A stretch of 64,000 nucleotides of DNA, taken from contig NC_091282.1 of NCBI RefSeq assembly GCF_032444005.1, positions 55,552,001 through 55,616,000 of the forward strand. Reading direction: 5' to 3'. The position numbers and the translations under genes were made by a program. Source of the stretch: Ranitomeya imitator. Its lineage: Eukaryota. The notes beneath the pieces are model-generated. The model saw only the letters and a program-made list of their open reading frames with translations, ran no database searches and was not told the DNA's origin. Positions 1,896 through 54,823 of this stretch are shown here, piece after piece (positions within the stretch are counted from its first letter, which is position 1; the number at the start of each line of letters is the position of its first letter).

Positions 1896-3120
1896 CATAG
1901 TAACATAGTAACATAGTTAGTAAGGCCGAAAAAAGACATTTGTCCATCCAGTTCAGCCTATATTCCATCATAATAAATCCCCAGATCTACGTCCTTCTAC
2001 AGAACCTAATAATTGTATGATACAATATTGTTCTGCTCCAGGAAGACATCCAGGCCTCTCTTGAACCCCTCGACTGAGTTCGCCATCACCACCTCCTCAG
2101 GCAAGCAATTCCAGATTCTCACTGCCCTAACAGTAAAGAATCCTCTTCTATGTTGGTGGAAAAACCTTCTCTCCTCCAGACGCAAAGAATGCCCCCTTGT
2201 GCCCGTCACCTTCCTTGGTATAAACAGATCCTCAGCGAGATATTTGTATTGTCCCCTTATATACTTATACATGGTTATTAGATCGCCCCTCAGTCGTCTT
2301 TTTTCTAGACTAAATAATCCTAATTTCGCTAATCTATCTGGGTATTGTAGTTCTCCCATCCCCTTTATTAATTTTGTTGCCCTCCTTTGTACTCTCTCTA
2401 GTTCCATTATATCCTTCCTGAGCACCGGTGCCCAAAACTGGACACAGTACTCCATGTGCGGTCTAACTAGGGATTTGTACAGAGGCAGTATAATGCTCTC
2501 ATCATGTGTATCCAGACCTCTTTTAATGCACCCCATGATCCTGTTTGCCTTGGCAGCTGCTGCCTGGCACTGGCTGCTCCAGGTAAGTTTATCATTAACT
2601 AGGATCCCCAAGTCCTTCTCCCTGTCAGATTTACCCAGTGGTTTCCCATTCAGTGTGTAATGGTGATATTGATTCCTTCTTCCCATGTGTATAACCTTAC
2701 ATTTATCATTGTTAAACCTCATCTGCCACCTTTCAGCCCAAGTTTCCAACTTATCCAGATCCATCTGTAGCAGAATACTATCTTCTCTTGTGTTAACTGC
2801 TTTACATAGTTTTGTATCATCTGCAAATATCGATATTTTACTGTGTAAACCTTCTACCAGATCATTAATGAATATGTTGAAGAGAACAGGTCCCAATACT
2901 GACCCTTGCGGTACCCCACTGGTCACAGCGACCCAGTTAGAGACTATACCATTTATAACCACCCTCTGCTTTCTATCACTAAGCCAGTTACTAACCCATT
3001 TACACACATTTTCCCCCAGACCAAGCATTCTCATTTTGTGTACCAACCTCTTGTGCGGCACGGTATCAAACGCTTTGGAAAAATCGAGATATACCACGTC
3101 CAATGACTCACCGTGGTCCA
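1896..3120 (-). mobile_element. CR1 LINE, 5'-truncated, with intact ORF2 RT fragment (2006-3121)
   Basis: YLDFSKAFDTVPH, GVPQGSVLGPVLFNIFINDL, FADDTKL. The 8-bp tail repeat appears as (CATAGTAA)n on + at about 1896-1920. The flanks rejoin as Tc1 sequence with GGCA duplicated. Confidence 0.95.
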
Positions 3121-4143
3121 CCGTGGCACCGTGGCAATCACTGCCTTAAGTCTGGAACCCATGGACATCACCAAACGCTGGGTTTCCTCCTTCCTAATGC
3201 TTTGCCAGGCCTTTACAGCCGCAGCCTTCAGGTCTTGCTTGTTTGTGGGTCTTTCCGTCTTAAGTCTGGATTTGAGCAAGTGAAATGCATGCTCAATTGG
3301 GTTTAGATCTGGAGATTGACTTGGCCATTGCAGAATGTTCCACTTTTTGGCACTCATGAACTCCTGGGTAGCTTTGGCTGTATTCTTGGGGTCATTGTCC
3401 ATCTGTACTATGAAGCGCCGTCCAATCAACTTTGCAGCATTTGGCTGAATCTGGGCTGAAAGTATATCCCGGTACACTTCAGAATTCATCCGGCTACTCT
3501 TGTCTGCTCTTATGTCATCAATAAACACAAGTGACCCAGTGCCATTGAAAGCCATGCATGCCCATGCCATCACGTTGCCTCCACCATGTTTTACAGAGGA
3601 TGTGGTGTGCCTTGGATCATGTGCCGTTCCCTTTCTTCTCCAAACTTTTTTCTTCCCATCATTCTGGTACAGGTTGATCTTTGTCTCATCTGTCCATAGA
3701 ATACTTTTCCAGAACTGAGCTGGCTTCTTGAGGTGTTTTTCTGCAAATTTAACTCTGGCCTGTCTATTTTTGGTATTGATGAATGGTTTGCATCTAGACG
3801 TGAACCCTTTGTATTTACTGTCATGGAGTCTTCTCTTTACTGTTGACTTAGAGACAGATACACCTACTTCACTGAGAGTGTTCTGGACTTCAGTTGATGT
3901 TGTGAACGGGTTCTTCTTCCCCCAATTTAGTATGCGGCAATCATCCACCACTGTTGTCATCCGTGGACGCCCAGGCCTTTTTGAGTTCCCAAGCTCACCA
4001 GTCAATTCCTTTTTTCTCAGAATGTACCCAACTGTTGATTTTGCTACTCCAAGCATGTCTGCTATCTCTCTGATGGATTTTTTCTTTTTTTTCAGCCTCA
4101 GGATGTTCTGCTTCACCTCAATTGAGAGTTCCTTTGACCGCAT
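3031..4143 (-). CDS. Tc1 transposase; the native last ~9 codons are displaced to about 1868-1897 by the CR1 insertion
   Basis: Paired-like HTH N-terminus, WTDETKI, QMDNDPK, SPDLNPIE with 34 residues between D and E. The native end AYKGFATKY* is readable on the - strand left of the CR1 tail. Confidence 0.9.
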   Translation of the reverse strand: MRSKELSIEVKQNILRLKKKKKSIREIADMLGVAKSTVGYILRKKELTGELGNSKRPGRPRMTTVVDDCRILNWGKKNPFTTSTEVQNTLSEVGVSVSKSTVKRRLHDSKYKGFTSRCKPFINTKNRQARVKFAEKHLKKPAQFWKSILWTDETKINLYQNDGKKKVWRRKGTAHDPRHTTSSVKHGGGNVMAWACMAFNGTGSLVFIDDIRADKSSRMNSEVYRDILSAQIQPNAAKLIGRRFIVQMDNDPKNTAKATQEFMSAKKWNILQWPSQSPDLNPIEHAFHLLKSRLKTERPTNKQDLKAAAVKAWQSIRKEETQRLVMSMGSRLKAVIATVPRWTTVSHWTWYISIFPKRLIPCRTRGWYTK

Positions 4144-4502
4144 GTTGTCTGCTCACAGCAACAGCTTCCAAATGCAAAACCACACACCTGGAATCCACCC
4201 CTGACCTTTTAAATACTTCATTGATTACATGTTAACGAGGGAGACGCCTTCAGAGTTAATTGCAGCCCTTAGAGTCCATTGTCCAATTACTTTTGGTCCC
4301 TTGAAAAAGAGGACGCTATGCATTACAGAGCTATGATTCCTAAACCCTTTCTCCGATTTGGATGTGGAAACTATCATATTGCAGCTGGGAGTGTGCACTT
4401 TCAGCCCATATTATATATATAATTGTATTTCTGAACATGTTTTTGTAAACAGCTAAAATAACAAAAATTGTGTCACTGTCCAAATATTTCTGGCCCTAAC
4501 TG

Positions 4503-4890
4503 TATGTAACAAATATGATGAACATCCTCTATCCAGACATTTTTCAGTTCATCATAAGGGATCAGTACAAGGAGTAAAAGTAACGGGCATTAAAGTGGTT
4601 CAAAAGGACTGGAGAAATGGGGATTTTATAAAACAAATGTCCCGTAAAGAAACCCTGTACATTTTTGAGATGGACACCTTAAAGCCGAAAGGTCTGAACA
4701 ATGAGGTGGAACTTTTTGCATTTAACTAAACGAAACTACGCAGGATGAGCCGCAAGTATTTAAAGCCACTTAGCACAGGGGGAGCCAACCCTGATGAAGG
4801 AATCCACCGAAACGCGTTGGTTTTTGGCTCCCACTGCAACCCGTACTCTCTTCAGGGGCACCACGTGACTGCTGATCACGTGACCCGAAC
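4503..4890 (+). pseudogene. PLE continuation: C-half of GIY-YIG and 3' pseudo-LTR region
   Basis: Removing the Tc1 and one TA restores the frame LCNI|CNKYDEHPLSRHFSVHH...KETLYIFEMDTLKPKGLNNEVELFAFN*. Confidence 0.85.
4781..4831 (+). ncRNA. Minimal type I hammerhead ribozyme motif (PLE-associated)
   Basis: GGAGCCAACC-CUGAUGA-A-GG(AAUCCA)CC-GAAA-CGCG-U-U-GGUUUUUGGCUCC. It has the canonical core, a 2-bp stem II, a palindromic stem III (ACGCGU) and an extended bulged stem I. Confidence 0.75.
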
Positions 4891-5671
4891 TGTTATATTT
4901 GCTAATGACAGGTGTTATGAAGGCAATCCAGAAACACAGTGTGCTTAGCGATCAGAGCGCACACAGTGATCTGACAAATACCCAAAAATACAAGAACGAG
5001 CTCTGAGACGTGGAAACTCTGTAGACTGCACACCTGATCCTATCCTAAACACAACTAAAAGCGGCTGTGGATTGCGCCTAACAACTACCTAGGCAACTCG
5101 GCACAGCCTAAGAAACTAGCTAGCCTGAAGATAGAAAAATAGGCCTGACTTGCCCCAGAGAAATTCCCCAAAGGAAAAGGCAGCCCCCCACATATAATGA
5201 CTGTGAGTAAGATGAAAAGACAAAACGTAGGGATGAAATAGATTCAGCAAAGTGGGGCCCGATATTCTAGGACAGAGCGAGGACAGTAAAGCGAACTTTG
5301 CAGTCTACAAAAAACCCTAAAGCAAAACCACGCAAAGGGGGCAAAAAAAAACCCACCGTGCCGAACTAACGGCACGGCGGTACACCCTTTGCGTCTCAGA
5401 GCTTCCAGCAAAACAAAAGACAAGCTGGACAGAAATAAAGCAACAAAAAAGCAAAAAGCACTTAGCTATACAGAGCAGCAGGTCACAGGAACAATCAGGA
5501 GAAGCTCAGATCCAACACTGAAACATTGACAAGGAGCAAGGATAGCAGCATCAGGCGGAGTTAAGTAATGAAGCAGTTAACGAGCTCACCAGAACACCTG
5601 AGGGAGGAAGCTCAGAAGCTGCAGTACCACTTGTGACCACAGGAGTGAATTCAGCCACAGAATTCACAACA
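4891..5671 (-). repeat. 3' LTR (781 bp)
   Basis: Matches 9862-10642 with 3 substitutions seen by eye (4897/9868, 5351/10322, 5436/10407). Confidence 0.95.
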
Positions 5672-8600
5672 GTACCCCCCCTTGAGGAGGGGTCACCGAA
5701 CCCTCACCAGAGCCCCCAGGCCGACCAGGATGAGCCGCATGAAAGGCACGAACAAGATCGGAAGCATGAACATCAGAGGCAAAAACCCAGGAATTATCTT
5801 CCTGAGCATAACCCTTCCATTTAACCAGATACTGGAGTTTCTGTCTAGAAACACGAGAATCCAAAATCTTCTCCACAATATACTCCAATTCCCCCTCCAC
5901 CAAAACCGGGGCAGGAGGCTCAACAGATGGAACCATAGGTGCCACGTATCTCCGCAACAACGACCTATGGAATACATTATGTATGGAAAAGGAGTCTGGG
6001 AGGGTCAAACGAAAAGACACAGGATTGAGAACCTCAGAAATCCTATACGGACCAATAAAACGAGGTTTAAATTTAGGAGAGGAAACCTTCATAGGAATAT
6101 GACGAGAAGATAACCAAACCAGATCCCCAAGACGAAGTCGGGGACCCACACGGCGTCTGCGATTAGCGAAAAGTTGAGCTTTCTCCTGGGACAAGATCAA
6201 ATTGTCCACTACCTGAGTCCAGATCTGCTGCAACCTATCCACCACAGAATCCACACCAGGACAGTCCGAAGACTCAACCTGTCCTGAAGAGAAACGAGGA
6301 TGGAACCCAGAATTGCAAAAAAATGGAGAAACCAAGGTAGCCGAGCTGGCCCGATTATTAAGGGCGAACTCAGCCAATGGCAAAAAGGACACCCAATCAT
6401 CCTGGTCTGCAGAAACAAAACATCTCAGATATGTTTCCAAGGTCTGATTGGTTCGTTCGGTCTGGCCATTAGTCTGAGGATGGAAAGCCGAGGAAAAGGA
6501 TAGGTCAATGCCCATCCTACCACAAAAGGCTCGCCAAAACCTTGAAACAAACTGGGAACCTCTGTCAGAAACAATATTCTCAGGAATGCCATGCAACCGA
6601 ACCACATGCTGAAAGAACAAAGGTACCAAATCAGAGGAGGAAGGCAATTTAGCCAAGGGCACCAGATGGACCATTTTAGAAAAGCGATCACAGACCACCC
6701 AAATGACTGACATCTTTTGAGAAACGGGAAGGTCAGAAATGAAATCTATCGAAATATGTGTCCAAGGCCTCTTTGGGACCGGCAAGGGCAAAAGCAACCC
6801 ACTGGCACGAGAACAGCAGGGCTTAGCCCTAGCACAAATCCCACAGGACTGCACAAAAGTACGTACATCCCGTGACAGAGATGGCCACCAGAAGGATCTA
6901 GCCACTAACTCTCTGGTACCAAAGATTCCAGGATGACCAGCCAACACCGAACAATGAAGTTCAGAGATAAGTTTATTAGTCCACCTATCAGGGACGAACA
7001 GTTTCTCTGCTGGACAACGATCAGGTTTATTCGCCTGAAATTTTTGCAGCACCCGCCGCAAATCAGGGGAGATGGCAGATACAATGACTCCTTCCTTGAG
7101 GATACCCGCTGGCTCAGATAAACCCGGAGAGTCGGGCACAAAACTCCTAGACAGAGCATCCGCCTTCACATTTTTAGAGCCCGGAAGGTACGAAATCACA
7201 AAGTCGAAGCGGGCAAAAAATAACGACCAACGGGCCTGTCTAGGATTCAAGCGCTTGGCAGACTCGAGATAAGTCAAGTTCTTATGATCAGTCAATACCA
7301 CCACGCGATGCTTAGCTCCTTCAAGCCAATGACGCCACTCCTCGAATGCCCACTTCATGGCCAGCAACTCTCGATTGCCCACATCATAATTACGCTCAGC
7401 GGGCGAAAACTTCCTGGAAAAGAAAGCACATGGTTTCATCACTGAGCAATCAGAACCTCTCTGTGACAAAACCGCCCCTGCTCCAATCTCAGAAGCATCA
7501 ACCTCGACCTGGAACGGAAGAGAAACATCTGGCTGACACAACACAGGGGCAGAACAAAAACGACGCTTCAACTCCTGAAAAGCTTCCACAGCAGCAGAAG
7601 ACCAATTAACCAAATCAGCACCCTTCTTGGTCAAATCGGTCAATGGTTTGGCAATGCTAGAAAAATTACAGATGAAGCGACGATAAAAATTAGCAAAGCC
7701 CAGGAACTTTTGCAGACTTTTCAGAGATGTCGGCTGAATCCAATCCTGGATGGCTTGGACCTTAACTGGATCCATCTCGATAGTAGAAGGGGTAAAGATG
7801 AACCCCAAAAATGAAACTTTCTGCACACCGAAGAGACACTTTGATCCCTTCACAAACAAAGAGTTAGCACGCAGGACCTGAAAAACCATTCTGACCTGCT
7901 TCACATGAGACTCCCAATCATCTGAGAAGATCAAAATGTCATCCAAGTAAACAATCAGGAATTTATCCAGATACTCACGGAAGATGTCATGCATAAAAGA
8001 CTGAAACACAGATGGAGCATTGGCAAGTCCGAACAGCATCACTAGATACTCAAAATGACCCTCGGGCGTATTGAATGCAGTTTTCCATTCATCTCCTTGC
8101 CTGATTCTCACCAGATTATACGCACCACGAAGATCTATCTTAGTGAACCAACTAGCCCCCTTAATCCGAGCAAACAAGTCAGATAACAATGGCAAGGGAT
8201 ACTGAAATTTAACAGTGATCTTATTAAGAAGGCGGTAATCAATACACGGTCTCAGCGAACCATCCTTCTTGGCTACAAAGAAGAACCCTGCTCCCAGTGG
8301 TGATGACGATGGGCGAATATGTCCCTTCTCCAGGGACTCCTTCACATAACTGCGCATAGCGGCGTGTTCGGGCACGGATAAATTAAATAATCAACCTTTA
8401 GGGAATTTACTACCAGGAATCAAATTGATAGCACAATCACAATCCCTATGCGGAGGTAGAGCATCGGACTTGGGCTCTTCAAATACATCCTGATAATCAG
8501 ACAAGAACTCTGGGACCTCAGAAGGGGTGGATGACGAAATCGACAAAAATGGAACATCACCATGTACCCCCTGACAACCCCAGCTGGATACCGACATGGA

Positions 8601-9749
8601 ATTCCAATCCAATACTGGATTATGGGTTTGTAGCCATGGCAACCCCAACACGACCACATCATGCAGATTATGCAACACCAGAAAGCGAATAACTTCCTGA
8701 TGTGCAGGAGCCATGCACATGGTCAGCTGGGCCCAGTATTGAGGTTTATTCTTGGCCAAAGGTGTAGCATCAATTCCTCTCAATGGAATAGGACACCGCA
8801 AAGGCTCCAAGAAAACCCCACAACGTTTAGCATAATCCAAATCCATCAGATTCAGGGCAGCGCCCGAATCCACAAACGCCATGACAGAAAACGACGACAA
8901 AGAACATATCAAGGTAATGGACAGAAGGAATTTGGACTGTACAGTACCAATGACGGCAGACCTAGCGGACCGCTTAGTGCGCTTAGGACAATCAGAAATA
9001 GCATGAGTGGAATCACCACAGTAGAAACACAGACCATTCAGACGTCTGTATTCCTGCCGTTCAACTCTAGTCATAGTCCTATCGCACTGCATAGGCTCAG
9101 GTTTAACCTCAGGCAGTACCGCCAAATGGTGCACAGATTTACGCTCGCGCAAGCGTCGACCGATCTGAATGGCCAAAGACAAAGACTCATTCAAACCAGC
9201 AGGCATAGGAGATCCCACCATGACATCCTTAAGAGCCTCAGAGAGACCCTTTCTGAACAAAGCTGCCAGCGCAGATTCATTCCACTGAGTGAGTACTGAC
9301 CATTTCCTAAATTTCTGACAATATACTTCTATATCATCCTGACCCTGGCACAAAGCCAGCAAATTTTTCTCAGCCTGATCCACTGAATTAGGCTCATCGT
9401 ACAGCAATCCGAGCGCCAGGAAAAACGCATCGACACTACTCAATGCAGGGTCTCCTGGCGCAAGAGAAAATGCCCAGTCTTGAGGGTCGCCTCAAGAAAT
9501 AATAATCAAAACCTGTTGAATAGGATTACCAGAAGAATGAGGTTTCAAGGCCAGAAATAGCTTACAATTATTTTTGAAACTTAGAAACTTAGTTCTATCT
9601 CCAAAAAACAAATCAGGAATAGGAATTCTTGGTTCTAACATAGATTTCTGATCAATAGTATCTTGAATTTTTTGTACATTTATAACGAGATTATCCATTG
9701 AAGAGCACAGACCCTGAATATCCATGTCCACACCTGTGTCCAGAATCAC
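5664..9749 (-). pseudogene. Single-frame gag-pro-pol polyprotein with two premature TGA stops (9492-9494, 8391-8393)
   Basis: ORFs 9492-9749, 8391-9443 and 5664-8375 share one frame. Motifs: retrotransposon gag, CFYCGDSTHAISDC knuckle, FVDSGA protease, YLDD RT, RNase H (DAS...TDHKNL...ADALSR), HHCC and D-D-E integrase, and a C-terminal chromodomain (EYIVEKILD...YLVKWKGY). Confidence 0.93.
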
Positions 9750-23045: not shown

Positions 23046-24541
23046 AAGACACCCACAGTCCCTGGACCCTCCAGGAATATCAGTCACACTACCATAAGCG
23101 TTGTCCACAATATCACATAAGTGCCAGCAGTACTAGACTCATAAGTGGCAGACAGAGTACCCCCATAAATATAAACCTAGTCACACAACTAGGAGTATTG
23201 TATTCACAGTACCCCAATAAATGCAGCCACACTAATCCTATAAAGGGCAGCCACAGTGTCTGGTACCTCAATAAATGTTGATCTTTCCCCATAGAAGTAC
23301 CAGCCGCAATATCCTATAAGTATCAGCCACATTATCCTCAAAGTGCCAGCTGTGTACTTCGTGTCAGTCACAACACCGCCATGTGTTTCAGCCACAGTAA
23401 ACCCATAAGTGCAACCCGCTCCCATAAGCACCAAGTAGACTAACTACATAAGTGTAAATGTGGCCGTTCTTTCCTCACTTTCTCACCAATATTGGGGGCT
23501 TTTATGGTATATGCTGTACTCTATAGTACTTCCCTCTCTTCCCGTCTATGAAACTTACCATTATGTTCATCATTTCCATTGAGCCTTTTGTTCTCCGTAC
23601 ATTGACCCTTTTGTTCTCCGCGCGGTCTTTTCCCCTTATCCATTCTTGTGCCAGAACTCATGATGCTAGGAGCGATAAAATGGTGGCACAGATCATTATT
23701 ATGTGTGCTTGGGCCACTCTCCATTCTAGTTTATGCACCTAACTTCTCCGCTGGAGGTTGCTTTTAACTTGAGAGGCTCGGGTCTAAAATCAAAGGTAAA
23801 ATCAGCGAAACACTTTGATTTCTGATCTTTCCCTCTAAATAAGTGCCAACTGGAAGCCTCTTATCTCTTTCACATCCATATAATAATTCCACATTGTTTG
23901 TTCAATACTAATCCTGACCTAGTCCTGAGGTTTCGTTACGGGGTGCGGTGTGTCATGCTGCTCTACGTGCAGGGTAATGACAAGGGAGATACAATAATGT
24001 TTCCATTCACTGACAGCAAGCGGAGATTTATGAAATGGTTAGCAATTCAAGCACAAAGGCCCCGATTCATCCAGACTGGCGTTTTGCACACCAGTCTTGA
24101 TAAAAAGGGTGCTGGATTGAGATGCAATTTGGCCCATGTTATAGCTACCATGTCCTGCCGCAAGAAATATTCTCCAGGCGCTAAAGTAGCATAAACGATG
24201 ATGAATCTGTTGGCCCCTCACGGCGGAACTGATGTAAATGCAAAAAAAGTTGCACATTTTTGGAGTTGTGCAAAAAGTTTGATATTTGAAGTAATTTCAC
24301 AGCAGAAAACTGCTGAAAGAATTAGGGGCAAAGTTTATTAAAAAGTTGCAGTGATCCTAAAAGATATTTTTCATGCTTGGTTCTCTTTAGGAAAGGGAAA
24401 AATCACGGACAATCAATATTATTTACGGACACGTTGGAAAACCATAATAAATGATTATGATTATAAGTGATACGTATCTGCAACCCATAATTCTTTTATG
24501 AAGACATGAGTTGCGTTCCCTGTAAACTGTAAAATGATGCT

Positions 24542-24967
24542 CCAAATAAATGAAGGAAAAAAAGTACATCCGCACCACTGCTATTAGTTAGACCCTAATG
24601 ATACTCCTCTAGTGCACCATATTGCCGTACACAGCCTATAAGGCAAAAAAATCACTTGCCGGGGTGCTGCTCATGCGACAGTTCATGTACATATCAAAAA
24701 AATAAGAAAAAAGAGAAGCGCACTCACCGGTGATGATTCATCAGATTTATTCGGACATGAACATTAAAAGGCAGGGAGGGTAGTGAACACACACGGACGA
24801 CGGCCGTTTCGTGCGCAATGCACTTCAACTGGTCCTGTCATTGCGCACGAAACGGCCGTCGTCCGTGTGTGTTCACTACCCTCCCTGCCTTTTAATGTTC
24901 ATGTCCGAATAAATCTGATGAATCATCACCGGTGAGTGCGCTTCTCTTTTTTCTTATTTTTTTGATA
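24542..24967. mobile_element. PLE-derived insertion containing an inverted pseudo-LTR pair
   Basis: Flanked by the 14-bp direct repeat TGTAAAATGATGCT (24528-24541, 24968-24981). The arms carry a PLE-type end (AATAAA...GGTGAGTGCGCTTCTC) and a GAAACGGCCGTC hammerhead half. Confidence 0.7.
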
Positions 24968-24971
24968 TGTA
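24688..24971. repeat. Perfect inverted repeat with 133-bp arms and an 18-nt loop
   Basis: 24688-24820 is the exact reverse complement of 24839-24971 (checked base by base). Confidence 0.97.
24795..24835 (-). ncRNA. Hammerhead-like fold with a non-canonical core
   Basis: GGAC-CAGUUGA-A-GUGC(AUUGC)GCAC-GAAA-CGGCCG-UC-GUCC. Stems I, II and III and a GUC triplet are in register, but the core reads CAGUUGA rather than CUGANGA. Confidence 0.5.
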
Positions 24972-26777
24972 AAATGATGCTAATTACAGTAAAAAAAAAT
25001 CTCTAGAATTTTCTTCATCTTTAAAAAAAAAAATCACATTTTACATTTTTTAAGGACAGGGTGAAAAAGTGCAGCATTTTTATGGATTGTCATGTAATCC
25101 TGGTCCATCCCTGCTCTCAGACGATCATTCAAAATGTAATGGCCATTGATTGTTTGGGAATCAAATCCTGATGACTAAAAATCTCAGGGGTCAAAATCAC
25201 GTTACGCAGACCCGACGCAGCGATAGGAAGGAGGCGAAATTTTTTTTAGTACCCAATTCACTCAACAATTAGAGATATCACAGAGGATTAAAACATATAG
25301 GTCTCGGTAATTAGCTATTTACAAGTTTACGACAAGCAATCTATACTGATGTTCGTGACGTTTTTCTGGTTTCTACAGATCACTTCCTAGCTTTACTGTA
25401 CAGACTGGAACCAGATGAACCAAGTCATCTCATTATCATTTTAGGGCAGGGGGTAAATGACAGCTGAGAGCTCTATATTGACCTCTGGAGGTCTAGAAAA
25501 GACAGGATAATAACACAATGCACACAAATATGGGCCTGTATGCACCTGTCAAACACTTGTCGTGGAAACCCCTGTCTAGGTAGAGGTTTAAGGGGAGACA
25601 TTTGCCAGTTTTGACGAAATCGGGGAGAATGATCACTCGGTAGATGAAGCAAAAATACGCACGTGTTTGTATGCAAAGTCTGTCTGCTGGGCCCTATGAC
25701 AATCTGGCTTTTATTACCATTTTAGAAAAGGAAGTAAAGGGCAGCATAAAAAAACATAAAAAGGGTATAAGGTGAACATAAAGCATATATTGTAGTAAAT
25801 AACAACTACGCTTATGAAACCAGACAATGTCTCAAACAGTTGTCGGAATTAGCAACCTACACACTGTCTCGTTGTAATGAAACGTATGCTTAAGGAAAAA
25901 TGAAAAACCAAAGTTATTAAAGCTGAATATGTAGACATAAATTGCATAAATGATAATAAAAGCAACCTAAAATTAAAAATTAGACACAAGAAATGCCATG
26001 TTTGTCACCGTAGTTATCTGTAGGTCTAAAGCATGAGTGAACTTCGGCAGCATAGATGGAGAATATTGATGACATTGATAATAATAATTGATTGTAATTC
26101 TGAAGATTCATGTTAATCATGTTCCCAATAACCCGGGGTCCTAAAATAGCTCAGACATTTCTCTTATCTGACAGTCTAAAAATTACCCTGCGTTCAGACC
26201 TGTCAGGGATGACAGATCAGGATATGGATTTAAATCTTCGTCAGTCATTAGTGAATCTATGGGGATGGAGTATTGGGCTCCGCTGATACGACAGCGCGGT
26301 CGCTCATGATAAATACGTGTTTTTGAACAGCAGAGAATTGGCTCGATTTATTTATTCTGCTTGGACGTTGCTTATGTGGACAAGTTACAAAGTATCAATC
26401 AATATGTTCATTTAGATGTCTGAATGACTGGTGGTAGTCAATGATTGCTCGTGATCATACCTCTTACTCAAGATTAGGAGATCTTTTGAAATTTGACTTT
26501 GCCGAACTTGATTTGCAGTGAATACATTTGTGCAAATCACATAATTAAAAAGCCTCTAATTGCCTGGAAAATATGTGTAGAACACTGTGAGGTCTGCTCG
26601 GAGTCAATTGAACATGCTTTGAGGTCTGTAATGCAAATACTGCCTTTTAATATCCAAATGACTTCTACCTATCAGCATATTTCACAACACATTTGCAGTA
26701 TCAGGCTTTTTAGGCTACCTAAAAATTATCTCTTGGGAGGGGGGATGGATACATGTATTGCTTTGGTTTATAGACAG

Positions 26778-27076
26778 TAGTGATGAGCGAGTATACTCGT
26801 TGCTCGGGTTTTCCCGAGCATGCTCGGGTGATCTCCGAGTATTTATGTCTGCTCGGAGATTTAGTTTTCATTGCGGCAGCTGAATGATTTACAGCTACTA
26901 GCCAGCCGGAGTACATGTGGGGGTTGCCTGGTTGCTAGGGAATCCCCACATGTAATCAAGCAGGCTAGTAGCTGTAAATCATTCTAAAACTAAATCTCCG
27001 AGCAGTCATAAATACTCGGAGGTCACCCGAGAGTGCTCGGAAAAACCCGAACAATGGGTACACTCGCTCATCACTA
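26778..27076. mobile_element. MITE with TAGTGATGAGCGAG...CTCGCTCATCACTA ends
   Basis: TIRs include terminal TA; the element is internally palindromic. Same family as 53583-53882. Confidence 0.85.
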
Positions 27077-28578: not shown

Positions 28579-29983
28579 CTGTATTTTTTGGACTAGAAAA
28601 TGCACTTTTTTCCTCCAAAAATGTGGAGGAAAATGGGGGGTGCGTCTCATAGTCTGGCTGTACTGGCTCTGGCTGTGGTGGGGAGGTGGGGGAGCGGCAT
28701 CAGCAGAGCAGCGGTTCACAGGAGGCTTCGGCTAACTCCTGTGACCGCTGCTAAAGAGAAATGAATATTCACTGCATTCCACGCCCATGGGTGTGGAGAG
28801 CAATGAATTAATTTCTCTTTAATAATAGTATTTTGGTATGCATGATTGGCCCCCACCCCCATCCTGTATGCATGGCCCCATCAGAAAACATTGAAAAAAA
28901 ACCATTACACTTACCTTCCCGGCTCTCTTTTGCAGTGTCCTGCTCCGTTGCAAGCAGCTGCTTTATGCTTGTAAGCAGTGTATGGCAGGGACGTCATGTG
29001 CTGTTCACAAGCAGAGCATAGCTGCCGGAATACTTACTGCTCTGCACGTTGGGACTGTGCGCGCAGACAGCCATGAGTATTCATTGCTCTTGAGTAGCGC
29101 GCACAGTGTCAGCTGCAGGTTTTCTGCTGCTACCGGCAGTCACGTGTGCTGCTACTTAAGAGAAATTAATATTCACTTCTTTCCATGCCCAGAGAGGTGA
29201 ATATTCATTTCTCTTAAGTAGCGGCACACGTGACCGCCGGCAGCTGCAGGAAGGCTTCGGCTGACACCATGCGCACTATTGAAGAGCAATGAATACTCTC
29301 TGCTCTCTGCGCGCACAGTTCCGACATGCAGAACAGTGAGTATTCCGGCAGCTGTGCTCTGCTTGTGATCTGTGAGGGAGCGCCGGGAAGGTAAGTGTAA
29401 TGGTTTTGTTTTTTTTAATGTTTTCTGATGGGGTCATGTATACCAGGACTGGGATTGGGGCCAATTATACCAGTATAGGAATGGGGCCATTCATACTAGG
29501 ATGAGATGGGGGCCCTGCATACCAGGATAGGGATGGGGACATGCATACTAGGACGGTATGGGGGCACTGCATATCAGGTTAAGGATGGGGCCATGCATGC
29601 CAGGATAGGGATGGAATCATGCATACCAGGGTAGGGATGAGGATAATCGTTCCTGCCAGGATAGGGATGAAGGAGACCATTCCTACCAGAATAGGGAGGA
29701 GGGGGCCATGCACACCAGGATAGGGATAAGGGGGTCAGCATACCAGGATGGGGATGAGGGGGCCATGCATACCAGGATAGGGATGAGGGGGCCTTGCATA
29801 CCAGGGTAGGGTTGAGGGGTCCATGTGTAAAAGGGTAGGGATGAGGGGACCATATATACCAGGATAGTGGATATTAAGTACAGAATTGACAACATTTTTG
29901 CTTCTTTTTTTTCCCCTAATTTCCTCCTCTAAAACCTGGGTGCGTCTTATGGTCCAGTGCATCTTATAGTCCGAAAAATACGG
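28579..29983. mobile_element. Non-autonomous Tc1/mariner-superfamily (Tc2/pogo-like) element with an internal fold-back and a G-rich ~29-bp tandem repeat (about 29440-29870)
   Basis: Imperfect TIRs CTGTATTTTTTGGACTAGAAAATGCAC / TGCATCTTATAGTCCGAAAAATACGG, with TA on the left and CA on the right. Confidence 0.75.
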
Positions 29984-39915: not shown

Positions 39916-40217
39916 CCCAAACACTATCAGTATCCCCCACACACCCCTATATAGTATGATAGTACCCCTATACAGTACAATGGTCCTCCCTTAGGATAGA
40001 TCATCAATGTCGGATCAGTGGGGGTACAGCACCCCCACTATTGGTTTGAACAGGGGGCAGATGTGCAGTACCCGGCCATGGCTACAATACAGCTCTGGAA
40101 GTGAGCAATTCCAGCCGCCAACAACATAGGGTACAACTGGTTGGTGTGGAGACGGGGTGTCATGCCCCCAGTGATCAGACATTGATGACTTATCCTAAGG
40201 ATAGACCATCAGTGTAA

Positions 40218-40410
40218 GGCTGCCGTCACACTATCAGTATTTGGTCAGTATTTTACATCAGTATTTGTAGCCAAACCCAGGAGTGGGTGATAAATACAGA
40301 AGTGGTGCATATGTTTCTATTATACTTTTCCTCTATTTGTTCCACTCCTGGTTTTGGCTACAAATACTGATGTAAAATACTGACCAAATACTGATAGTGT
40401 GACGGCAGCC
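40218..40410. mobile_element. Young MITE with ~70-bp TIRs, nested in an older TTAA-ended MITE (about 39985-40435)
   Basis: GGCTGCCGTCACACTATCAGTATTTGGTCAG... and its reverse complement. A related copy lies at 41871-42065. Confidence 0.85.
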
Positions 40411-41083
40411 TTAAAGTCCCGGACAACCCCTTTAATAATCCATCACCTAATCTCTGCTTGAGCTGGCATTATAAGACCTAGAGCAGAATGCCCCAACTCC
40501 AGTTTTCAAGAGCCAACAACAGATCATATTGTCCGAGAGAATCGGCAAGAACTGCTGCAAAGGGAGGCGGCAATAGTAGAAAGGAGCAAAGCCCGGCACT
40601 GGAGCCGAGACAGGTAAGGAAGAGATAACTGAGATGAACCATGTGGATGATAAGTCAGATCGTCATGTCACAGGTTTCACAATAGCTGGAGATTGCCAGA
40701 CGATGCCCCCCTCACTCATCACATAAAGTAAGCTTATAGTAAATCCTAGGTATAATGCCAAGTATCATGGTAGTCCCAGCCTGCCCTCACCGGGGGGCTT
40801 CACTTCATATCTAGCAAGGTACACACTAAATCAGAGCCCAGGAAAAAACAAACACTGTGATCTATGAAAGTGAAAAATGCTTTTGCTTCACAAATAAAGA
40901 CTCATTCCAAGATATTGATGTAGAACTAAAGGCATTACAGACACGTTACCCTGTGCAACAAGGGACACATTGTTATTCTTCACTCTTATCGCAGGGAGGA
41001 AAAAATCACATCCATTCTGCCAGTCATTGCTGTATGTATGAAGCAATGGTACAGAAACATGGACTACAGTATAATGACATCCA

Positions 41084-41870: not shown

Positions 41871-42065
41871 GGACCACATTCACACGTTCAGTATTTGGTC
41901 AGTATTTTACCTCAGTATTTGTAAGCCAAAATCAGGAGTGGAACAATCAGAGGAAAAGTATAATAGAAACTCGTCACCACTACTGTATTTATCCCTCACT
42001 CCTGATTTTGGCTTACAAATACTGATGTAAAATACTGACCCAATACTGAGCATGTGAACGTGGCA
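41871..42065. mobile_element. MITE related to 40218-40410
   Basis: TTCACACGTTCAGTATTTGGTCAGTATTTTAC... with a matching inverted right arm. Confidence 0.75.
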
Positions 42066-45165: not shown

Positions 45166-46476
45166 TATATGTCAGTAGACACATATATGTGTATATATAT
45201 TAATATTTCATACAGCGCTAGATAGCTTTAAAGCCGGTAATTCAATTACCGGCTTCTGCTATCTCCTTCCTAAACCCGACATGATATGAGACATGGTTTA
45301 CATACAGTAAACCATCTCATATCACCTTTTTTTTGCATATTCCACACTACTAATGTTAGTAGTGTGTATGTGCAAAATTTGGCCGTTCTAGCTATTAAAT
45401 TAAAGGGTTAAATGGCGGAAAAAATTGGCGTGGGCTCCCGCGCAATTTTCTCCGCCAGAGTAGTAAAGCCGTAAAGCCAGTGACTGAGAGCAGATATTAA
45501 TAGCCTGGAGAGGGTCCATGGTTATTGCCCCCCCCCCCCCGGCTACAAACATCTGCCCCCAGCCACCGCAGAAAAGGCACATCTGGAAGATGCGCCTATT
45601 CTGGCACTTGGCCACTCTCTTCCCATTCCCGTGTAGCGGTGGGATATGGGGTAATGAAGGGTTAATGCCACCTTGCTATTGTAAATTGACATTAAGCCAA
45701 ATTAATAATGGAGAGGCGTCAATTATGACACCTATCCATTATTAATCCAATAGTAGTAAAGGGTTAAAAAAACACAAACACATTATTTAAAAGTATTTTA
45801 ATGAAATAAAAACAAAGGTTGTTGTAATATTTTATTCTACGCTCAATCCACCTGAAGACCCTTGCTCTGTAACAAAGAAAAAATAATAAACCAACAATAT
45901 ACATACCTTCCGAAAATCTGTAACGTCCCACGATGTAAATCCATCTGAAGGGATTAAAATATTTTACAGCCAGGAGCTCTGCTAATGCAGTGGTGCTCGT
46001 GGCTGCAAAACCCCAGGGAATGAAGGTAAAGTAGGTCAATGACCTATATTTACCTTCATTCGCGGTGAGGCGCCCTCTGCTGGCTGTTCCTGGAGTGTGG
46101 GAACTTTCCTAGAAAGCTCCCAGGCTCGAGTTCATATGAGGACAACCAGCAGAGGGCGCCTCACCGCAAATGAAGATAGCTACAGGTCATTGACCTACAT
46201 TACCTTCATTCTCCGGGGTTTTACAGCCACGAGCAGCGCTGCTTTAGCAGAGCTCCTGGCTGTAAAATATTTTAACCCCTTCAGATGGATTTACATCGTG
46301 GGACGTTACAGATCTTCGGAAGGTATGTATATTGTTGGTTTATTATTTTTTCTTTGTTACAGAGCGAGGGTCTTCAGATGGATTGAGCGTAGAATAAAAT
46401 ATTACAACAACCTTTGTTTTTATTTCATTAAAATACTTTTAAATAATGTGTTTGTGTTTTTTTAACCCTTTACTAC
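44868..46476. mobile_element. Truncated non-autonomous DNA transposon with a ~340-bp-arm internal inverted repeat (45753-46091 / 46139-46476)
   Basis: GGCTGGCGTCACAC start. The arms are near-identical, so the same peptide appears in ORFs 45764-46039(-) and 46097-46465(+). Confidence 0.8.
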
Positions 46477-47519: not shown

Positions 47520-48245
47520 AATATTTAGAATTGAGAGTCCTCAGTAGTTGATACCTTTTAATGGCTAACTGAGAAGATGGTAACAAATTGCAAGCTTTCG
47601 AGACTACTCAGGCCTCTTCATCAGGCATAGACTAATAGAAATTCTGAAGAATGCAATGGATAAGACAAGTGACATGAAGCAGAGCTATCATTATGGGAGA
47701 GGGGGATAAACAGTTGTATCCATAAATATTGGAACAGTTCATAGATAAGGAGTGTGAAAGTTTTATTGTCCTCAAATTGGGGTTTGTGTTGTGATGCCCC
47801 CACAAGGTCTGAGGAGCAAATTCCTTAATTGATGTAAAAAGACATAAATCAATGCGACACATTCATTCCTGCACTGAGAGTATCAAAGGTTGTTGTCATA
47901 AATTTATACTCACAGATTCTTCTGTCTCTCTGAGATTTGAAGTTAGCTTTTAATACAAGAAATCTCATGTCTATGGAGATAAAAATGTTTGGCCACAGGT
48001 AGATCCATTATTTTTCTCTTATTGTGTGGCGGTGATTGTTCATCCTTGTTCCTTGTGCCTCCACCACATACAGAATCCCAGTTGGACATTTAGTACATAT
48101 AATTAGGTACACCACATTAGATGTGATGCAGCTGAAGGTACCTGGCATCTTGTAGTCCTGATGTGAGTTGGGGATCTTTATCTTGTCCGTGGTCATTATA
48201 AATGGACAGGCTTACATTTTTTCTGGTTTCAGGGAAAGGTTTCTG
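47520..48245 (-). pseudogene. Second PLE family: GIY-YIG endonuclease remnant and 3' pseudo-LTR
   Basis: FSCITSNVVYLIICTKCPTGILYV...RMNNHRHTI, then DLPVAKHF...RRICEYKFMTTTFDTLSAGMN. PLE-type end CCATTAAAAGGTATCAAC. Confidence 0.8.
47589..47627 (-). ncRNA. Minimal type I hammerhead ribozyme motif
   Basis: UGC-CUGAUGA-A-GAGGC(CUGAGUA)GUCUC-GAAA-GC-U-U-GCA: canonical core, 5-bp stem II, palindromic AGCU stem III. Confidence 0.75.
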
Positions 48246-53582: not shown

Positions 53583-53882
53583 TAGTGATGAGCGACTATG
53601 CTCGTTACTCGGGTTTCTCTGAGCATGCTCTGGTGATCTCCGAGTATTTCGGCGTGCTCAGAGATTTAGTTTATGCCGATGCAGCTGCATGATTTGCAGC
53701 TGCTAGACAGCTTGAATGCATGTGGGGATTGTCTGTTTGTTAAGCAACCCCCATATGTATTCAAGCTGTCTAGCAGCCGCAAATCATGCAGCTGTGTCAA
53801 CATAAACTAAATCTCCGAGCACGCCAAAATATTTAGAGACCACCGGAGTAACCCGAGTAACGAGCACACTTGTTCATCACTA
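53583..53882. mobile_element. TAGTGATGAGCGA-type MITE inside the 74-bp satellite
   Basis: Same ends and body as 26778-27076. Confidence 0.8.
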
Positions 53883-54109: not shown

Positions 54110-54823
54110 GGTACCTTCACACTCAGCGACGCTGCAGAGATACTGACAACGATGTCGATCGCTGTAGCGTCGCTGTTTGGTCGCTGGAGAGTTGTCACAC
54201 AGACAGCTCTCCAGCGACCAACGATGCCGAAGTCCCCTGGTAACCAGGGTAAACATCGGGTTACTAAGCGCAGGGCCGCGCTTAGTAACCCGATGTTTAC
54301 CCTGGTTACCATCGTAAAAGTAAAAAAAACAAACACTACATACTTACCTTCCGCTGTCTATCCCCGGCGCTGTGCTTTCCTGCACTGACTGTGAGCACAG
54401 CGGCCGGAAAGCAGAGCGGTGACGTCACCGCTGTACTTTACGGCTGGCCGTCGCTCACAGCCAGTGCAGAGAAGCACAGCGCCGGGGACAGACAGTGGAA
54501 GGTAAGTATGTAGTGTTTATTTTTTTTAACTTTTACGCTGGTAACCAGGGTAAACATCGGGTTACTAAGCGCGGCCCTGCGCTTAGTAACCCGATGTTTA
54601 CCCTGGTTACCAGTGAAGACATCGCTGAATCGGCGTCACACACGCCGATTCAGCGATGTCTGCAGGGAGTCCAGCGACGAAACAAAGTGCTGGACTTTCT
54701 GCAGTGACCAACGACATCACAGCAGGATCCTGATCGCTGCTGCGTGTCAAACTGAACGATATCGCTAGCCAGGACGCTGCAACGTCACGGATCGCTAGCG
54801 ATATCGTTCAGTGTGACGGTACC
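54110..54823. mobile_element. Palindromic MITE with two internal 72-bp hairpins
   Basis: GGTACCTTCACACT...GTGTGACGGTACC ends. Hairpins at 54239-54310 and 54540-54611. Confidence 0.85.

What the first reader, a model, noticed from the sequence alone, without database searches (positions are those of the whole stretch)
24528..24981. Perfect 133-bp-arm palindrome made by snap-back inside a hammerhead, delivered as one insertion with a 14-bp TSD
Seen: the arms have zero mismatches and an 18-nt loop, and the 426-bp insert is bounded by TGTAAAATGATGCT twice. The turn-around falls in stem II of a hammerhead-like motif, so one strand has the whole fold and the other has only the GAAA half. The + strand arm gives the host intron an AATAAA (24908) and a GTGAGT donor (24932). 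Established: PLE insertions often carry inverted pseudo-LTRs. Inference: reverse transcription folded back at the ribozyme hairpin, or a small non-autonomous ribozyme-bearing retroelement is propagating as a hairpin unit. In the pre-mRNA it would form a perfect 133-bp duplex (ADAR, Dicer or dsRNA-sensor substrate); in DNA it could form a cruciform.
Basis: partly seen in the sequence, partly recalled or inferred. Interest (0 to 1): 0.75.

Follow-up and report, generated by a model that had tools for sequence, protein, structure and literature searches.

The report
Head-to-head frog retroelement insertion
The perfect palindrome is real: it is one young insertion of a short non-coding jumping element pasted in head-to-head with a partial second copy of itself, which is the usual way Penelope-type retroelements insert, so it is a clean example of a known kind and not a new mechanism.

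Summary
Observation confirmed. The arms are 24688-24820 and 24839-24971 (133 nt, 100% complementary), with an 18-nt spacer. A 426-bp insert (24542-24967) lies between two copies of TGTAAAATGATGCT. The last 4 arm bases (TGTA) are also the first 4 of the right TSD, a microhomology.

Contigs of a related species stop at 24541 and restart at 24968, so that species has an empty site. The insert's left junction is seen in one and probably two individuals of the same species.

Other genomic copies carry the spacer contiguous with the left arm in minus sense. The unit is therefore a 297-nt non-coding element on the minus strand (24838 to 24542). The right arm is an inverted copy of element positions 19-147.

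Other fold-back copies have different junctions, so the hairpin does not propagate as a unit.

The short arm's outer end lies 3 nt past the element's only internal look-alike of its own 3' end. There is no base pairing at the turn. This favours two separately primed cDNAs over snap-back.

The "hammerhead" has a canonical 3' half but a non-canonical core. Rfam scores it 12 bits against a threshold of 34.

The scan has already described similar fold-back insertions elsewhere in this poison-frog genome.

The parts
24528..24541 (.). Target-site duplication, left copy (TGTAAAATGATGCT). The + strand 3'-OH at 24541 is the inferred primer of the long arm.
   Evidence: The contig of related species X7 ends exactly at 24541.
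24542..24838 (-). Full-length copy of a 297-nt non-coding element, sense on the minus strand (5' end at 24838, 3' end at 24542). It has no poly(A) tail.
   Evidence: Family contigs lie on the minus strand across 24774-24838, spacer and arm contiguous. Ten X1 contigs diverge heterogeneously beyond 24835. There is no other copy in the window, no tRNA and no tandem repeat.
24792..24838 (-). Hammerhead-like motif at the element's extreme 5' end: GGAC | CAGUUGA | A | GUGC-loop-GCAC | GAAAC-GGCC-GUC | GUCC. The predicted cut lies between 24799 and 24798.
   Evidence: Rfam Hammerhead_1 gives 12.0 bits (gathering score 34), E = 1.8, in a different register. The fold z-score is -0.02.
24821..24838 (-). 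The 18-nt 'loop'. It is element positions 1-18, present in the long arm only.
24839..24967 (+). Inverted partial second copy (element positions 19-147, sense on the + strand), 100% identical to the long arm.
24968..24981 (.). Target-site duplication, right copy. Its first 4 nt (TGTA, 24968-24971) also continue the arm, a 4-nt microhomology at this junction.
   Evidence: The X7 contig begins exactly at 24968.
24543..24578 (-). 3'-terminal U-rich motif of the element (positions 261-296).
24932..24964 (+). Internal look-alike of the 3'-terminal motif (element positions 112-144; also at 24695-24727 on the minus strand). The short arm ends 3 nt beyond it.
   Evidence: local alignment score 15, against 7.9 +/- 1.6 for shuffles. 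It is the best internal match. Only 0.08% of the window's 40-mers score as high.
24376..24527 (.). Left part of an unrelated high-copy host repeat into which the element inserted. The right part is about 24982-25080.
   Evidence: depth in the hundreds to thousands in both species, and many paralogous contigs run across the site without the insert.

Best explanation
This is one recent retrotransposition event of a short (297-nt), non-coding element with a hammerhead relic, most likely mobilised in trans by a Penelope-like element (PLE). It is of the 'pLTR-only' or monomeric non-LTR-retrozyme kind. It inserted head-to-head with a partial second copy of itself into an AT-rich site inside another repeat.

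Inferred steps:
1. A 14-bp staggered break gave two 3'-OH ends.
2. The + strand end (24541) primed cDNA 1 at the RNA's 3' end, and cDNA 1 ran to the RNA's 5' end (24838).
3. The minus strand end (...TACA-3') primed cDNA 2 on a 4-nt match (UGUA), just past an internal look-alike of the 3'-terminal motif (element position 147). cDNA 2 stopped at position 19.
4. The polymerase then jumped, without homology, from the RNA's 5' end onto the end of the other cDNA and copied it. This joined the two halves.

The perfect palindrome is a by-product of this event. The 18-nt 'loop' is simply the 18 nt by which the second cDNA fell short.

Shown: the anatomy, the TSD, the empty site in a related species, the family membership and strand, the variable junctions in other copies, and the 3'-motif look-alike.

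Inferred: the PLE enzyme, the order of the steps, and the template jump.
For: - The inverted repeat, TSD and microhomology are.
- One search shows the empty site in related species X7 (contigs end at 24541 and start at 24968, with a joint 24527>24972) and the left junction in X1 and X4.
- One search also shows the insert is repeated in the genome, with family contigs carrying the spacer plus left arm contiguous on the minus strand, and heterogeneous loose ends beyond 24835. Other fold-back copies have a sense arm starting at 24838 and a variable partner (24756; 24596 and beyond).
- the short arm ends 3 nt past the single best internal look-alike of the 3' terminus (score 15; 0.08% of the window's 40-mers reach this).
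- There is no poly(A), and the target is AT-rich (69% against 57% for the window), with ATT beside the + strand nick.
- Literature: an inverted 5'-truncated copy next to the element is the usual PLE structure, and TSD length varies (PMC8557442; PMC3846280, TSDs of 8-10 bp).
- A purified PLE protein cleaves and extends both DNA strands, starts reverse transcription at internal sites of the RNA, and does not need hammerhead cleavage (PMC11167929).
- Animal retrozymes are non-autonomous PLE derivatives with many dispersed monomers (bioRxiv 10.64898/2026.07.22.740005).
Against: - I could not test for sequence homology to a PLE that encodes RT and GIY-YIG. The window holds no homologue.
- The two outer ends differ by 150 nt, not by the 30-40-nt 'tail' described for PLEs.
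- The look-alike of the 3' motif is U-rich and low in complexity, and this is a single case.
- The final structure is also what snap-back synthesis followed by microhomology joining would give.
- The palindrome's centre was not verified in reads.
Confidence: 0.55

Rival explanations
1. Snap-back (self-priming). A single cDNA reached the RNA's 5' end, folded back on itself and copied 129 nt of its own sequence. It was then joined to the other target end through the TGTA microhomology.
For: The short 18-nt spacer and perfect arms are what snap-back gives. Self-priming was proposed for PLE head-to-head repeats with palindromes at the junction (PMC3846280). One copy in the related species has arms meeting at 24798|24862 with 8 filler letters, a hairpin-like joint.
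Against: No base pairing is available at the turn: 24838 T faces 24821 C. The only 2-bp option would need a skipped base. The short arm ends at the internal look-alike of the 3' motif, which snap-back does not predict. Other copies have 'loops' of 82 nt and more. PLE RTs are not known to carry an RNase H domain that would free the cDNA (my own knowledge; not checked here).
Confidence: 0.25
2. Same anatomy, but made by another reverse transcriptase (a LINE) through twin priming, not by a PLE.
For: Twin priming uses the second nicked strand and microhomology, as seen at 24968-24971. LINE or LTR reverse transcriptases occur in the window.
Against: There is no poly(A) or microsatellite tail. Twin priming gives an inversion of adjacent segments, not a duplicated inverted segment (my own knowledge). 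The motif at the 5' end has the PLE minimal-hammerhead layout (PMC4209133).
Confidence: 0.1
3. The hairpin itself is a mobile unit: a small fold-back element that spreads with this junction.
For: The family is abundant, and fold-back copies recur.
Against: Junctions differ between copies, and most copies diverge into unrelated DNA at 24835-24838. The outer ends are not inverted repeats of each other.
Confidence: 0.03
4. Assembly or read artefact (a fold-back chimera).
For: The centre and the right junction were not seen in independent reads. Palindromes are error-prone in assembly.
Against: An artefact would not produce an exact 14-bp TSD, a microhomology junction and flanks that are contiguous in a related species. 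The left junction is present in short-read contigs of one and probably two individuals.
Confidence: 0.03

Closest known systems
Penelope-like element insertions with an adjacent inverted 5'-truncated copy (inverted pLTRs)
   Same: Head-to-head inverted copies, a TSD of variable length, no poly(A), an AT-rich target, a microhomology junction, arms of unequal length, and a hammerhead-type motif in the repeated part (PMC8557442, PMC3846280, PMC11167929).
   Different: There is no ORF and no direct pLTR pair. The whole insert is 426 bp. The outer ends differ by 150 nt, not by a 30-40-nt tail. Homology to a coding PLE is not shown.
Animal non-LTR retrozymes (amphibian hammerhead repeats of about 170-400 nt)
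   Same: The size (297 nt), the lack of coding capacity, low GC (44%), the hammerhead-type motif with a short palindromic helix III, its occurrence in amphibians, and the existence of dispersed monomers (PMC7229834; bioRxiv 10.64898/2026.07.22.740005).
   Different: It is not tandem. The core is not canonical. The unit starts about 40 nt upstream of the predicted cut site, not at it.
L1 twin priming (5' inversions)
   Same: The second target strand primes on the RNA by microhomology, and the two cDNAs are resolved in the middle.
   Different: L1 cases invert neighbouring segments with little overlap and carry a poly(A) tail. Here the same segment is copied twice and there is no A tail.
Other fold-back hammerhead insertions noted by this scan in the same genome
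   Same: Young palindromes with 13-16-bp TSDs and hammerhead or hammerhead-like motifs near the centre.
   Different: This family has its own core variant (CAGUUGA). Its short arm starts at an internal site, not at the 3' end.

Membership tests
Hammerhead ribozyme, type I (PLE minimal form) | Conserved 5' core CUGANGA (C3 U4 G5 A6 N7 G8 A9) | tested here: not met
   The structure-preserving register reads CAGUUGA (U4A, A6U). Rfam's own alignment reads UUGAAGU (C3U, A9U), with 3 of 6 helix I pairs broken.
Hammerhead ribozyme, type I (PLE minimal form) | 3' core GAAA, the A15.1-U16.1 pair and the cleavage triplet GUH | tested here: met
   CGAAAC-GGCC-GUC at 24811-24799 on the minus strand.
Hammerhead ribozyme, type I (PLE minimal form) | Helix I of 4-5 bp, an unpaired base 5' of helix II, and a short helix III with a palindromic loop (PMC4209133) | tested here: met
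   GGAC/GUCC, a bulged A, GUGC/GCAC (4 bp, shorter than the 6-8 bp typical of PLE forms), and the palindrome ACGGCCGU.
Hammerhead ribozyme, type I (PLE minimal form) | Reaches the Rfam RF00163 gathering score | tested here: not met
   12.0 bits against 34, E = 1.8 in a 57-nt search, and nothing in a 701-nt search. Control: the canonical minimal motif at 4791-4818 is not detected either, so this test is weak.
Hammerhead ribozyme, type I (PLE minimal form) | Self-cleavage | not testable with these tools
   The only hint is one low-depth contig of the related species with fold-back arms meeting at the predicted cut site (24798|24862).
Penelope-like element insertion / PLE-dependent non-autonomous element | TSD-flanked insertion with an adjacent inverted 5'-truncated copy (head-to-head) | tested here: met
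Penelope-like element insertion / PLE-dependent non-autonomous element | No poly(A) tail, and an AT-rich target | tested here: met
   The 3' end reads ...CATTTATTTGG. The target is 69% AT against 57% for the window.
Penelope-like element insertion / PLE-dependent non-autonomous element | Sequence homology to the pLTR or 3' end of a PLE encoding RT and GIY-YIG | not testable with these tools
   There is no homologue in the window. No tool here searches the rest of this genome by DNA similarity.
Non-LTR retrozyme | Tandem array of units, each with an active hammerhead | tested here: not met
   It is a single unit plus an inverted partial copy, TRF finds no array, and the core is non-canonical.
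L1-type twin-priming insertion | Poly(A) tail and an inversion without a large duplication | tested here: not met
   There is no A tail, and 129 nt are present in both orientations.
Fold-back DNA transposon / MITE | Terminal inverted repeats at the outer ends and a short TSD (2-10 bp) | tested here: not met
   The outer ends (24542......24967) are not inverted copies of each other, and the TSD is 14 bp.
tRNA-derived SINE | A tRNA-like head | tested here: not met
   ARAGORN finds nothing in 24400-25100.

The most novel reading that the evidence does not exclude
The 5'-terminal motif may be a functional altered-core hammerhead, or a non-catalytic fold kept for the reverse transcriptase, and not a decayed one. 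The same architecture with A6 changed to U (C-N-G-U-N-G-A plus a bulged A) recurs in another abundant family of this genome according to earlier scan notes. The roughly 80-nt 5' segment that contains the motif is the most repeated part of the element in two species. One copy in the related species has both fold-back arms ending at the predicted cut site.
Probability: 0.1. Interest if true: 0.6.

Novelty: new member of a known kind. Interest (0 to 1): 0.3.

Why it matters
How Penelope-like elements produce their inverted copies is still unsettled. Self-priming and priming from both nicked strands are both in the literature.

Young copies with zero decay, an intact TSD and an empty site in a sister species preserve every junction. 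They can therefore be read as records of the reaction. This copy adds one data point: there is no pairing at the turn, and the second arm starts at a look-alike of the 3' end. That favours two primed cDNAs.

By itself it is one case of a pattern the scan has already met several times in this genome. A perfect 133-bp palindrome with an 18-nt spacer may also be a fragile or dsRNA-forming site. That was not tested.

Tried and rejected
- **Rfam, whole window at gathering thresholds:** no hit.
- **Rfam at E <= 10 over 701 nt:** only generic miRNA-hairpin hits caused by the palindrome.
- **In-window BLAST of the insert:** no other copy.
- **In-window BLAST of a modelled empty site:** no paralogue of the host repeat.
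- **Metagenome scan with a 25-mer of the motif:** one hit, a chance match in a GC-rich bacterial contig (L001).
- **Viral-contig scan:** nothing.
- **tRNA and tandem-repeat scans:** nothing.
- **The CUGAUGA box at 24914-24920:** no downstream GAAA in the element sense strand, so I take it as coincidental.
- **Test of whether the two halves of the element (1-147, 148-297) are duplicates:** similarity is confined to the last 40-50 nt and is not significant over the whole halves.
- **Search for a RING-finger exon, to check the 'RNF165 intron' statement:** none in the window, so the host gene and its strand stay unverified.
- **Pfam on ORFs near the canonical hammerhead at 4791:** no GIY-YIG domain found.
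- **TSD search around the other palindromes of the window:** none of 11 nt or more.
- **RNA runs:** none of the listed holders is RNA, so expression, editing and small RNAs could not be examined.
- **Limits of read laying:** it had only short-read contigs, so depth is not copy number and the palindrome's centre could not be bridged.
Full report
**1.

The repeat finder gives arms 24688-24820 and 24839-24971: 133 nt, 100% complementary, 18 nt apart. It also gives an exact 14-nt direct repeat, TGTAAAATGATGCT, at 24528-24541 and 24968-24981. The insert is 24542-24967 (426 bp).

The outermost 4 nt of the right arm (TGTA) are also the first 4 nt of the right TSD copy. So 129 nt of that arm are insert, and the junction carries a 4-nt microhomology.

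As RNA, either strand folds into the long hairpin (-277.7 and -283.6 kcal/mol, z about -30). AATAAA (24908-24913) and GTGAGT (24932-24937) are present.

**2. It is a real, young insertion**

I laid Logan contigs of four public runs on 23800-25700.

- In the best holder of the same species (X1), a contig spans 24075-24587 and bridges the left junction.
- In a second individual (X4), a contig covering the unique left flank runs to 24563. That is 22 nt into the insert, suggestive but under the tool's 31-nt rule.
- In a related species (X7), the orthologous contigs end exactly at 24541 and begin exactly at 24968. Another contig joins 24527 to 24972 with 3 other letters between. That species therefore has the empty site.

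The flanks 24376-24540 and about 24982-25080 are themselves a high-copy repeat. Many paralogous contigs cross the site without the insert.

Short-read contigs cannot traverse a perfect palindrome. The centre and the right junction therefore remain unverified by independent reads. Even so, an artefact would not produce a TSD, a microhomology junction and an empty site in a sister species.

**3. What the unit is**

The insert is repeated in the genome. Summed contig depth is in the hundreds to thousands, against about 10 on the unique flanks. The tool warns that this is not a copy number. The window itself holds no second copy.

Contigs of other copies lie on the minus strand over 24774-24838. 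This means the 18-nt 'loop' is contiguous with the left arm in minus sense. Ten X1 contigs run into mutually unlike sequence just beyond 24835.

The element is therefore a 297-nt unit on the minus strand, with its 5' end at 24838 and its 3' end at 24542. The right arm is an inverted copy of element positions 19-147.

The unit has no long ORF, no tRNA-like part, no tandem structure and no poly(A) tail. Its GC content is 44%.

The 5' 80 nt are highly repeated in both species. The 3' half is repeated only in the species of the window.

**4. The junction is not a family trait**

Other fold-back copies appear in the contigs:

- 24756 joined to 24838 on the opposite strand (X1).
- 24596... joined to 24838 (X3).
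- 24814 joined to 24923 (X7).
- 24798 joined to 24862 with 8 filler letters (X7).

In two of these the sense arm again starts at 24838, the element's 5' end, while the partner varies. So the hairpin does not spread as a unit, and the turn is not tied to stem II. The constant feature is the RNA's 5' end.

**5. Snap-back or two primers?**

Both routes give the same product. Two details favour two separately primed cDNAs.

First, nothing pairs at the turn: 24838 T faces 24821 C. The only 2-bp alternative would require skipping a base.

Second, the 3'-terminal 36 nt of the element (24543-24578) have one clear internal look-alike, at element positions 112-144. The local alignment score is 15, against 7.9 +/- 1.6 for shuffles. 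It is the best-scoring place inside the element, and only 0.08% of all 40-mers of the window score as high.

The short arm ends 3 nt past this look-alike, just as the long arm ends 1 nt past the true terminal motif. A random stop of copy-back synthesis would land within a few bases of that point only about 3% of the time.

This fits what is published for a purified PLE protein (PMC11167929). It cleaves and extends both DNA strands. It starts reverse transcription at defined internal sites of the RNA. It prefers AT-rich targets with an ATT motif, and it does not need hammerhead cleavage. Here the target is 69% AT, and ATT lies beside the + strand nick.

Caveats: this is a single case, the motif is U-rich, and self-priming has been proposed for exactly such PLE palindromes (PMC3846280). 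I therefore put the two-primer route at roughly twice the odds of snap-back, no more.

**6. The 'hammerhead'**

On the minus strand the element begins with GGAC, CAGUUGA, a bulged A, the hairpin GUGC-AUUGC-GCAC, GAAAC-GGCC-GUC, and then GUCC.

The 3' half is canonical, as are helix I, the bulged base and the short palindromic helix III. These match the PLE minimal hammerhead layout (PMC4209133).

The 5' core is not canonical. It has U4A and A6U in this register.

Rfam's type I model appears only when 57 nt are searched alone. It scores 12.0 bits against a gathering score of 34, with E = 1.8. It chooses another register (UUGAAGU: C3U, A9U) with half of helix I broken. The motif is no more stable than shuffles (z = -0.02).

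The Rfam null is weak evidence, because the canonical minimal hammerhead at 4791-4818 in this window is not detected either.

I read the motif as hammerhead-derived, with catalysis doubtful and untested. One low-depth contig of the related species has both fold-back arms meeting at the predicted cut site (24798|24862). That is a hint, not evidence.

The geometric statement that the turn (element position 19) falls in the 5' strand of stem II is correct. By section 4, it is incidental.

**7. Comparison with what is known**

An inverted 5'-truncated copy directly beside a PLE, TSDs of variable length and microhomology junctions are standard PLE features (PMC8557442, PMC3846280).

Amphibian non-LTR retrozymes are units of about 300 nt with dimer-type hammerheads (PMC7229834). 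A 2026 preprint derives them from PLE pLTRs and reports many dispersed monomers (10.64898/2026.07.22.740005).

This copy works like those. Membership in a PLE-dependent family is likely but unproven, because homology to a coding PLE could not be tested. It fails the retrozyme definition (tandem units, canonical ribozyme). It also fails the L1 twin-priming signature (A tail, inversion without duplication).

Earlier notes of this scan describe several similar fold-back insertions with 13-16-bp TSDs elsewhere in this poison-frog genome. I used them as leads only.

**8. Not tested**

I could not examine the host gene and strand, expression, A-to-I editing, small RNAs or cruciform formation. No RING exon is in the window.

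**Verdict**

The structure is an ordinary, very clean product of Penelope-type insertion. The specific 'snap-back inside a hammerhead' mechanism is not supported as stated.

Noticed in passing
window 4776-4836 (+): A canonical minimal hammerhead (CUGAUGA ... GAAAC-GCG-UU) enclosed by a long helix I (inverted repeat 4776-4788 / 4824-4836). Rfam does not detect it even in a 59-nt search.
   Followed up: partly
window 45753-46476; 29005-29368; 53628-53848; 40183-40445; 41874-42063; 26778-27076; 54237-54613: Seven more short-spacer palindromes in the same 64 kb, with arms of 67-335 nt at 85-98% identity and spacers of 12-191 nt. None has the CGAAAC...GTC half-motif, and none has an exact flanking direct repeat of 11 nt or more. 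Whether they are older fold-back retro-insertions or MITEs is open.
   Followed up: partly
window 24376-24540 and 24982-25080: The target of the insertion is itself a very high-copy repeat in both frog species (summed contig depth up to 7,599). Its family is not identified.
   Followed up: no
window 5664-9443 (-): A Ty3/gypsy-type pol ORF (RT, RNase H, integrase, chromodomain; 903 aa) with an upstream gag/protease-like ORF.
   Followed up: no
window 2006-4143 (-): A reverse-transcriptase ORF fragment (RVT_1) overlapping a Tc1/Sleeping-Beauty-like transposase ORF (HTH_Tnp_Tc3_2, DDE_3). The inverted repeat 1607-1663 / 4451-4507 looks like the Tc1 terminal repeats.
   Followed up: no
window 47585-47624 (-): Another CUGAUGA...GAAA pattern match (CUGAUGA-AGAGGCC...UCUC-GAAAGC) that could be a hammerhead-type motif. 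Not examined.
   Followed up: no
run X7, contig joint 24798|24862: In the related species, one copy of the family is a fold-back whose two arms meet at the predicted hammerhead cut site, with 8 unrelated letters between them.
   Followed up: no
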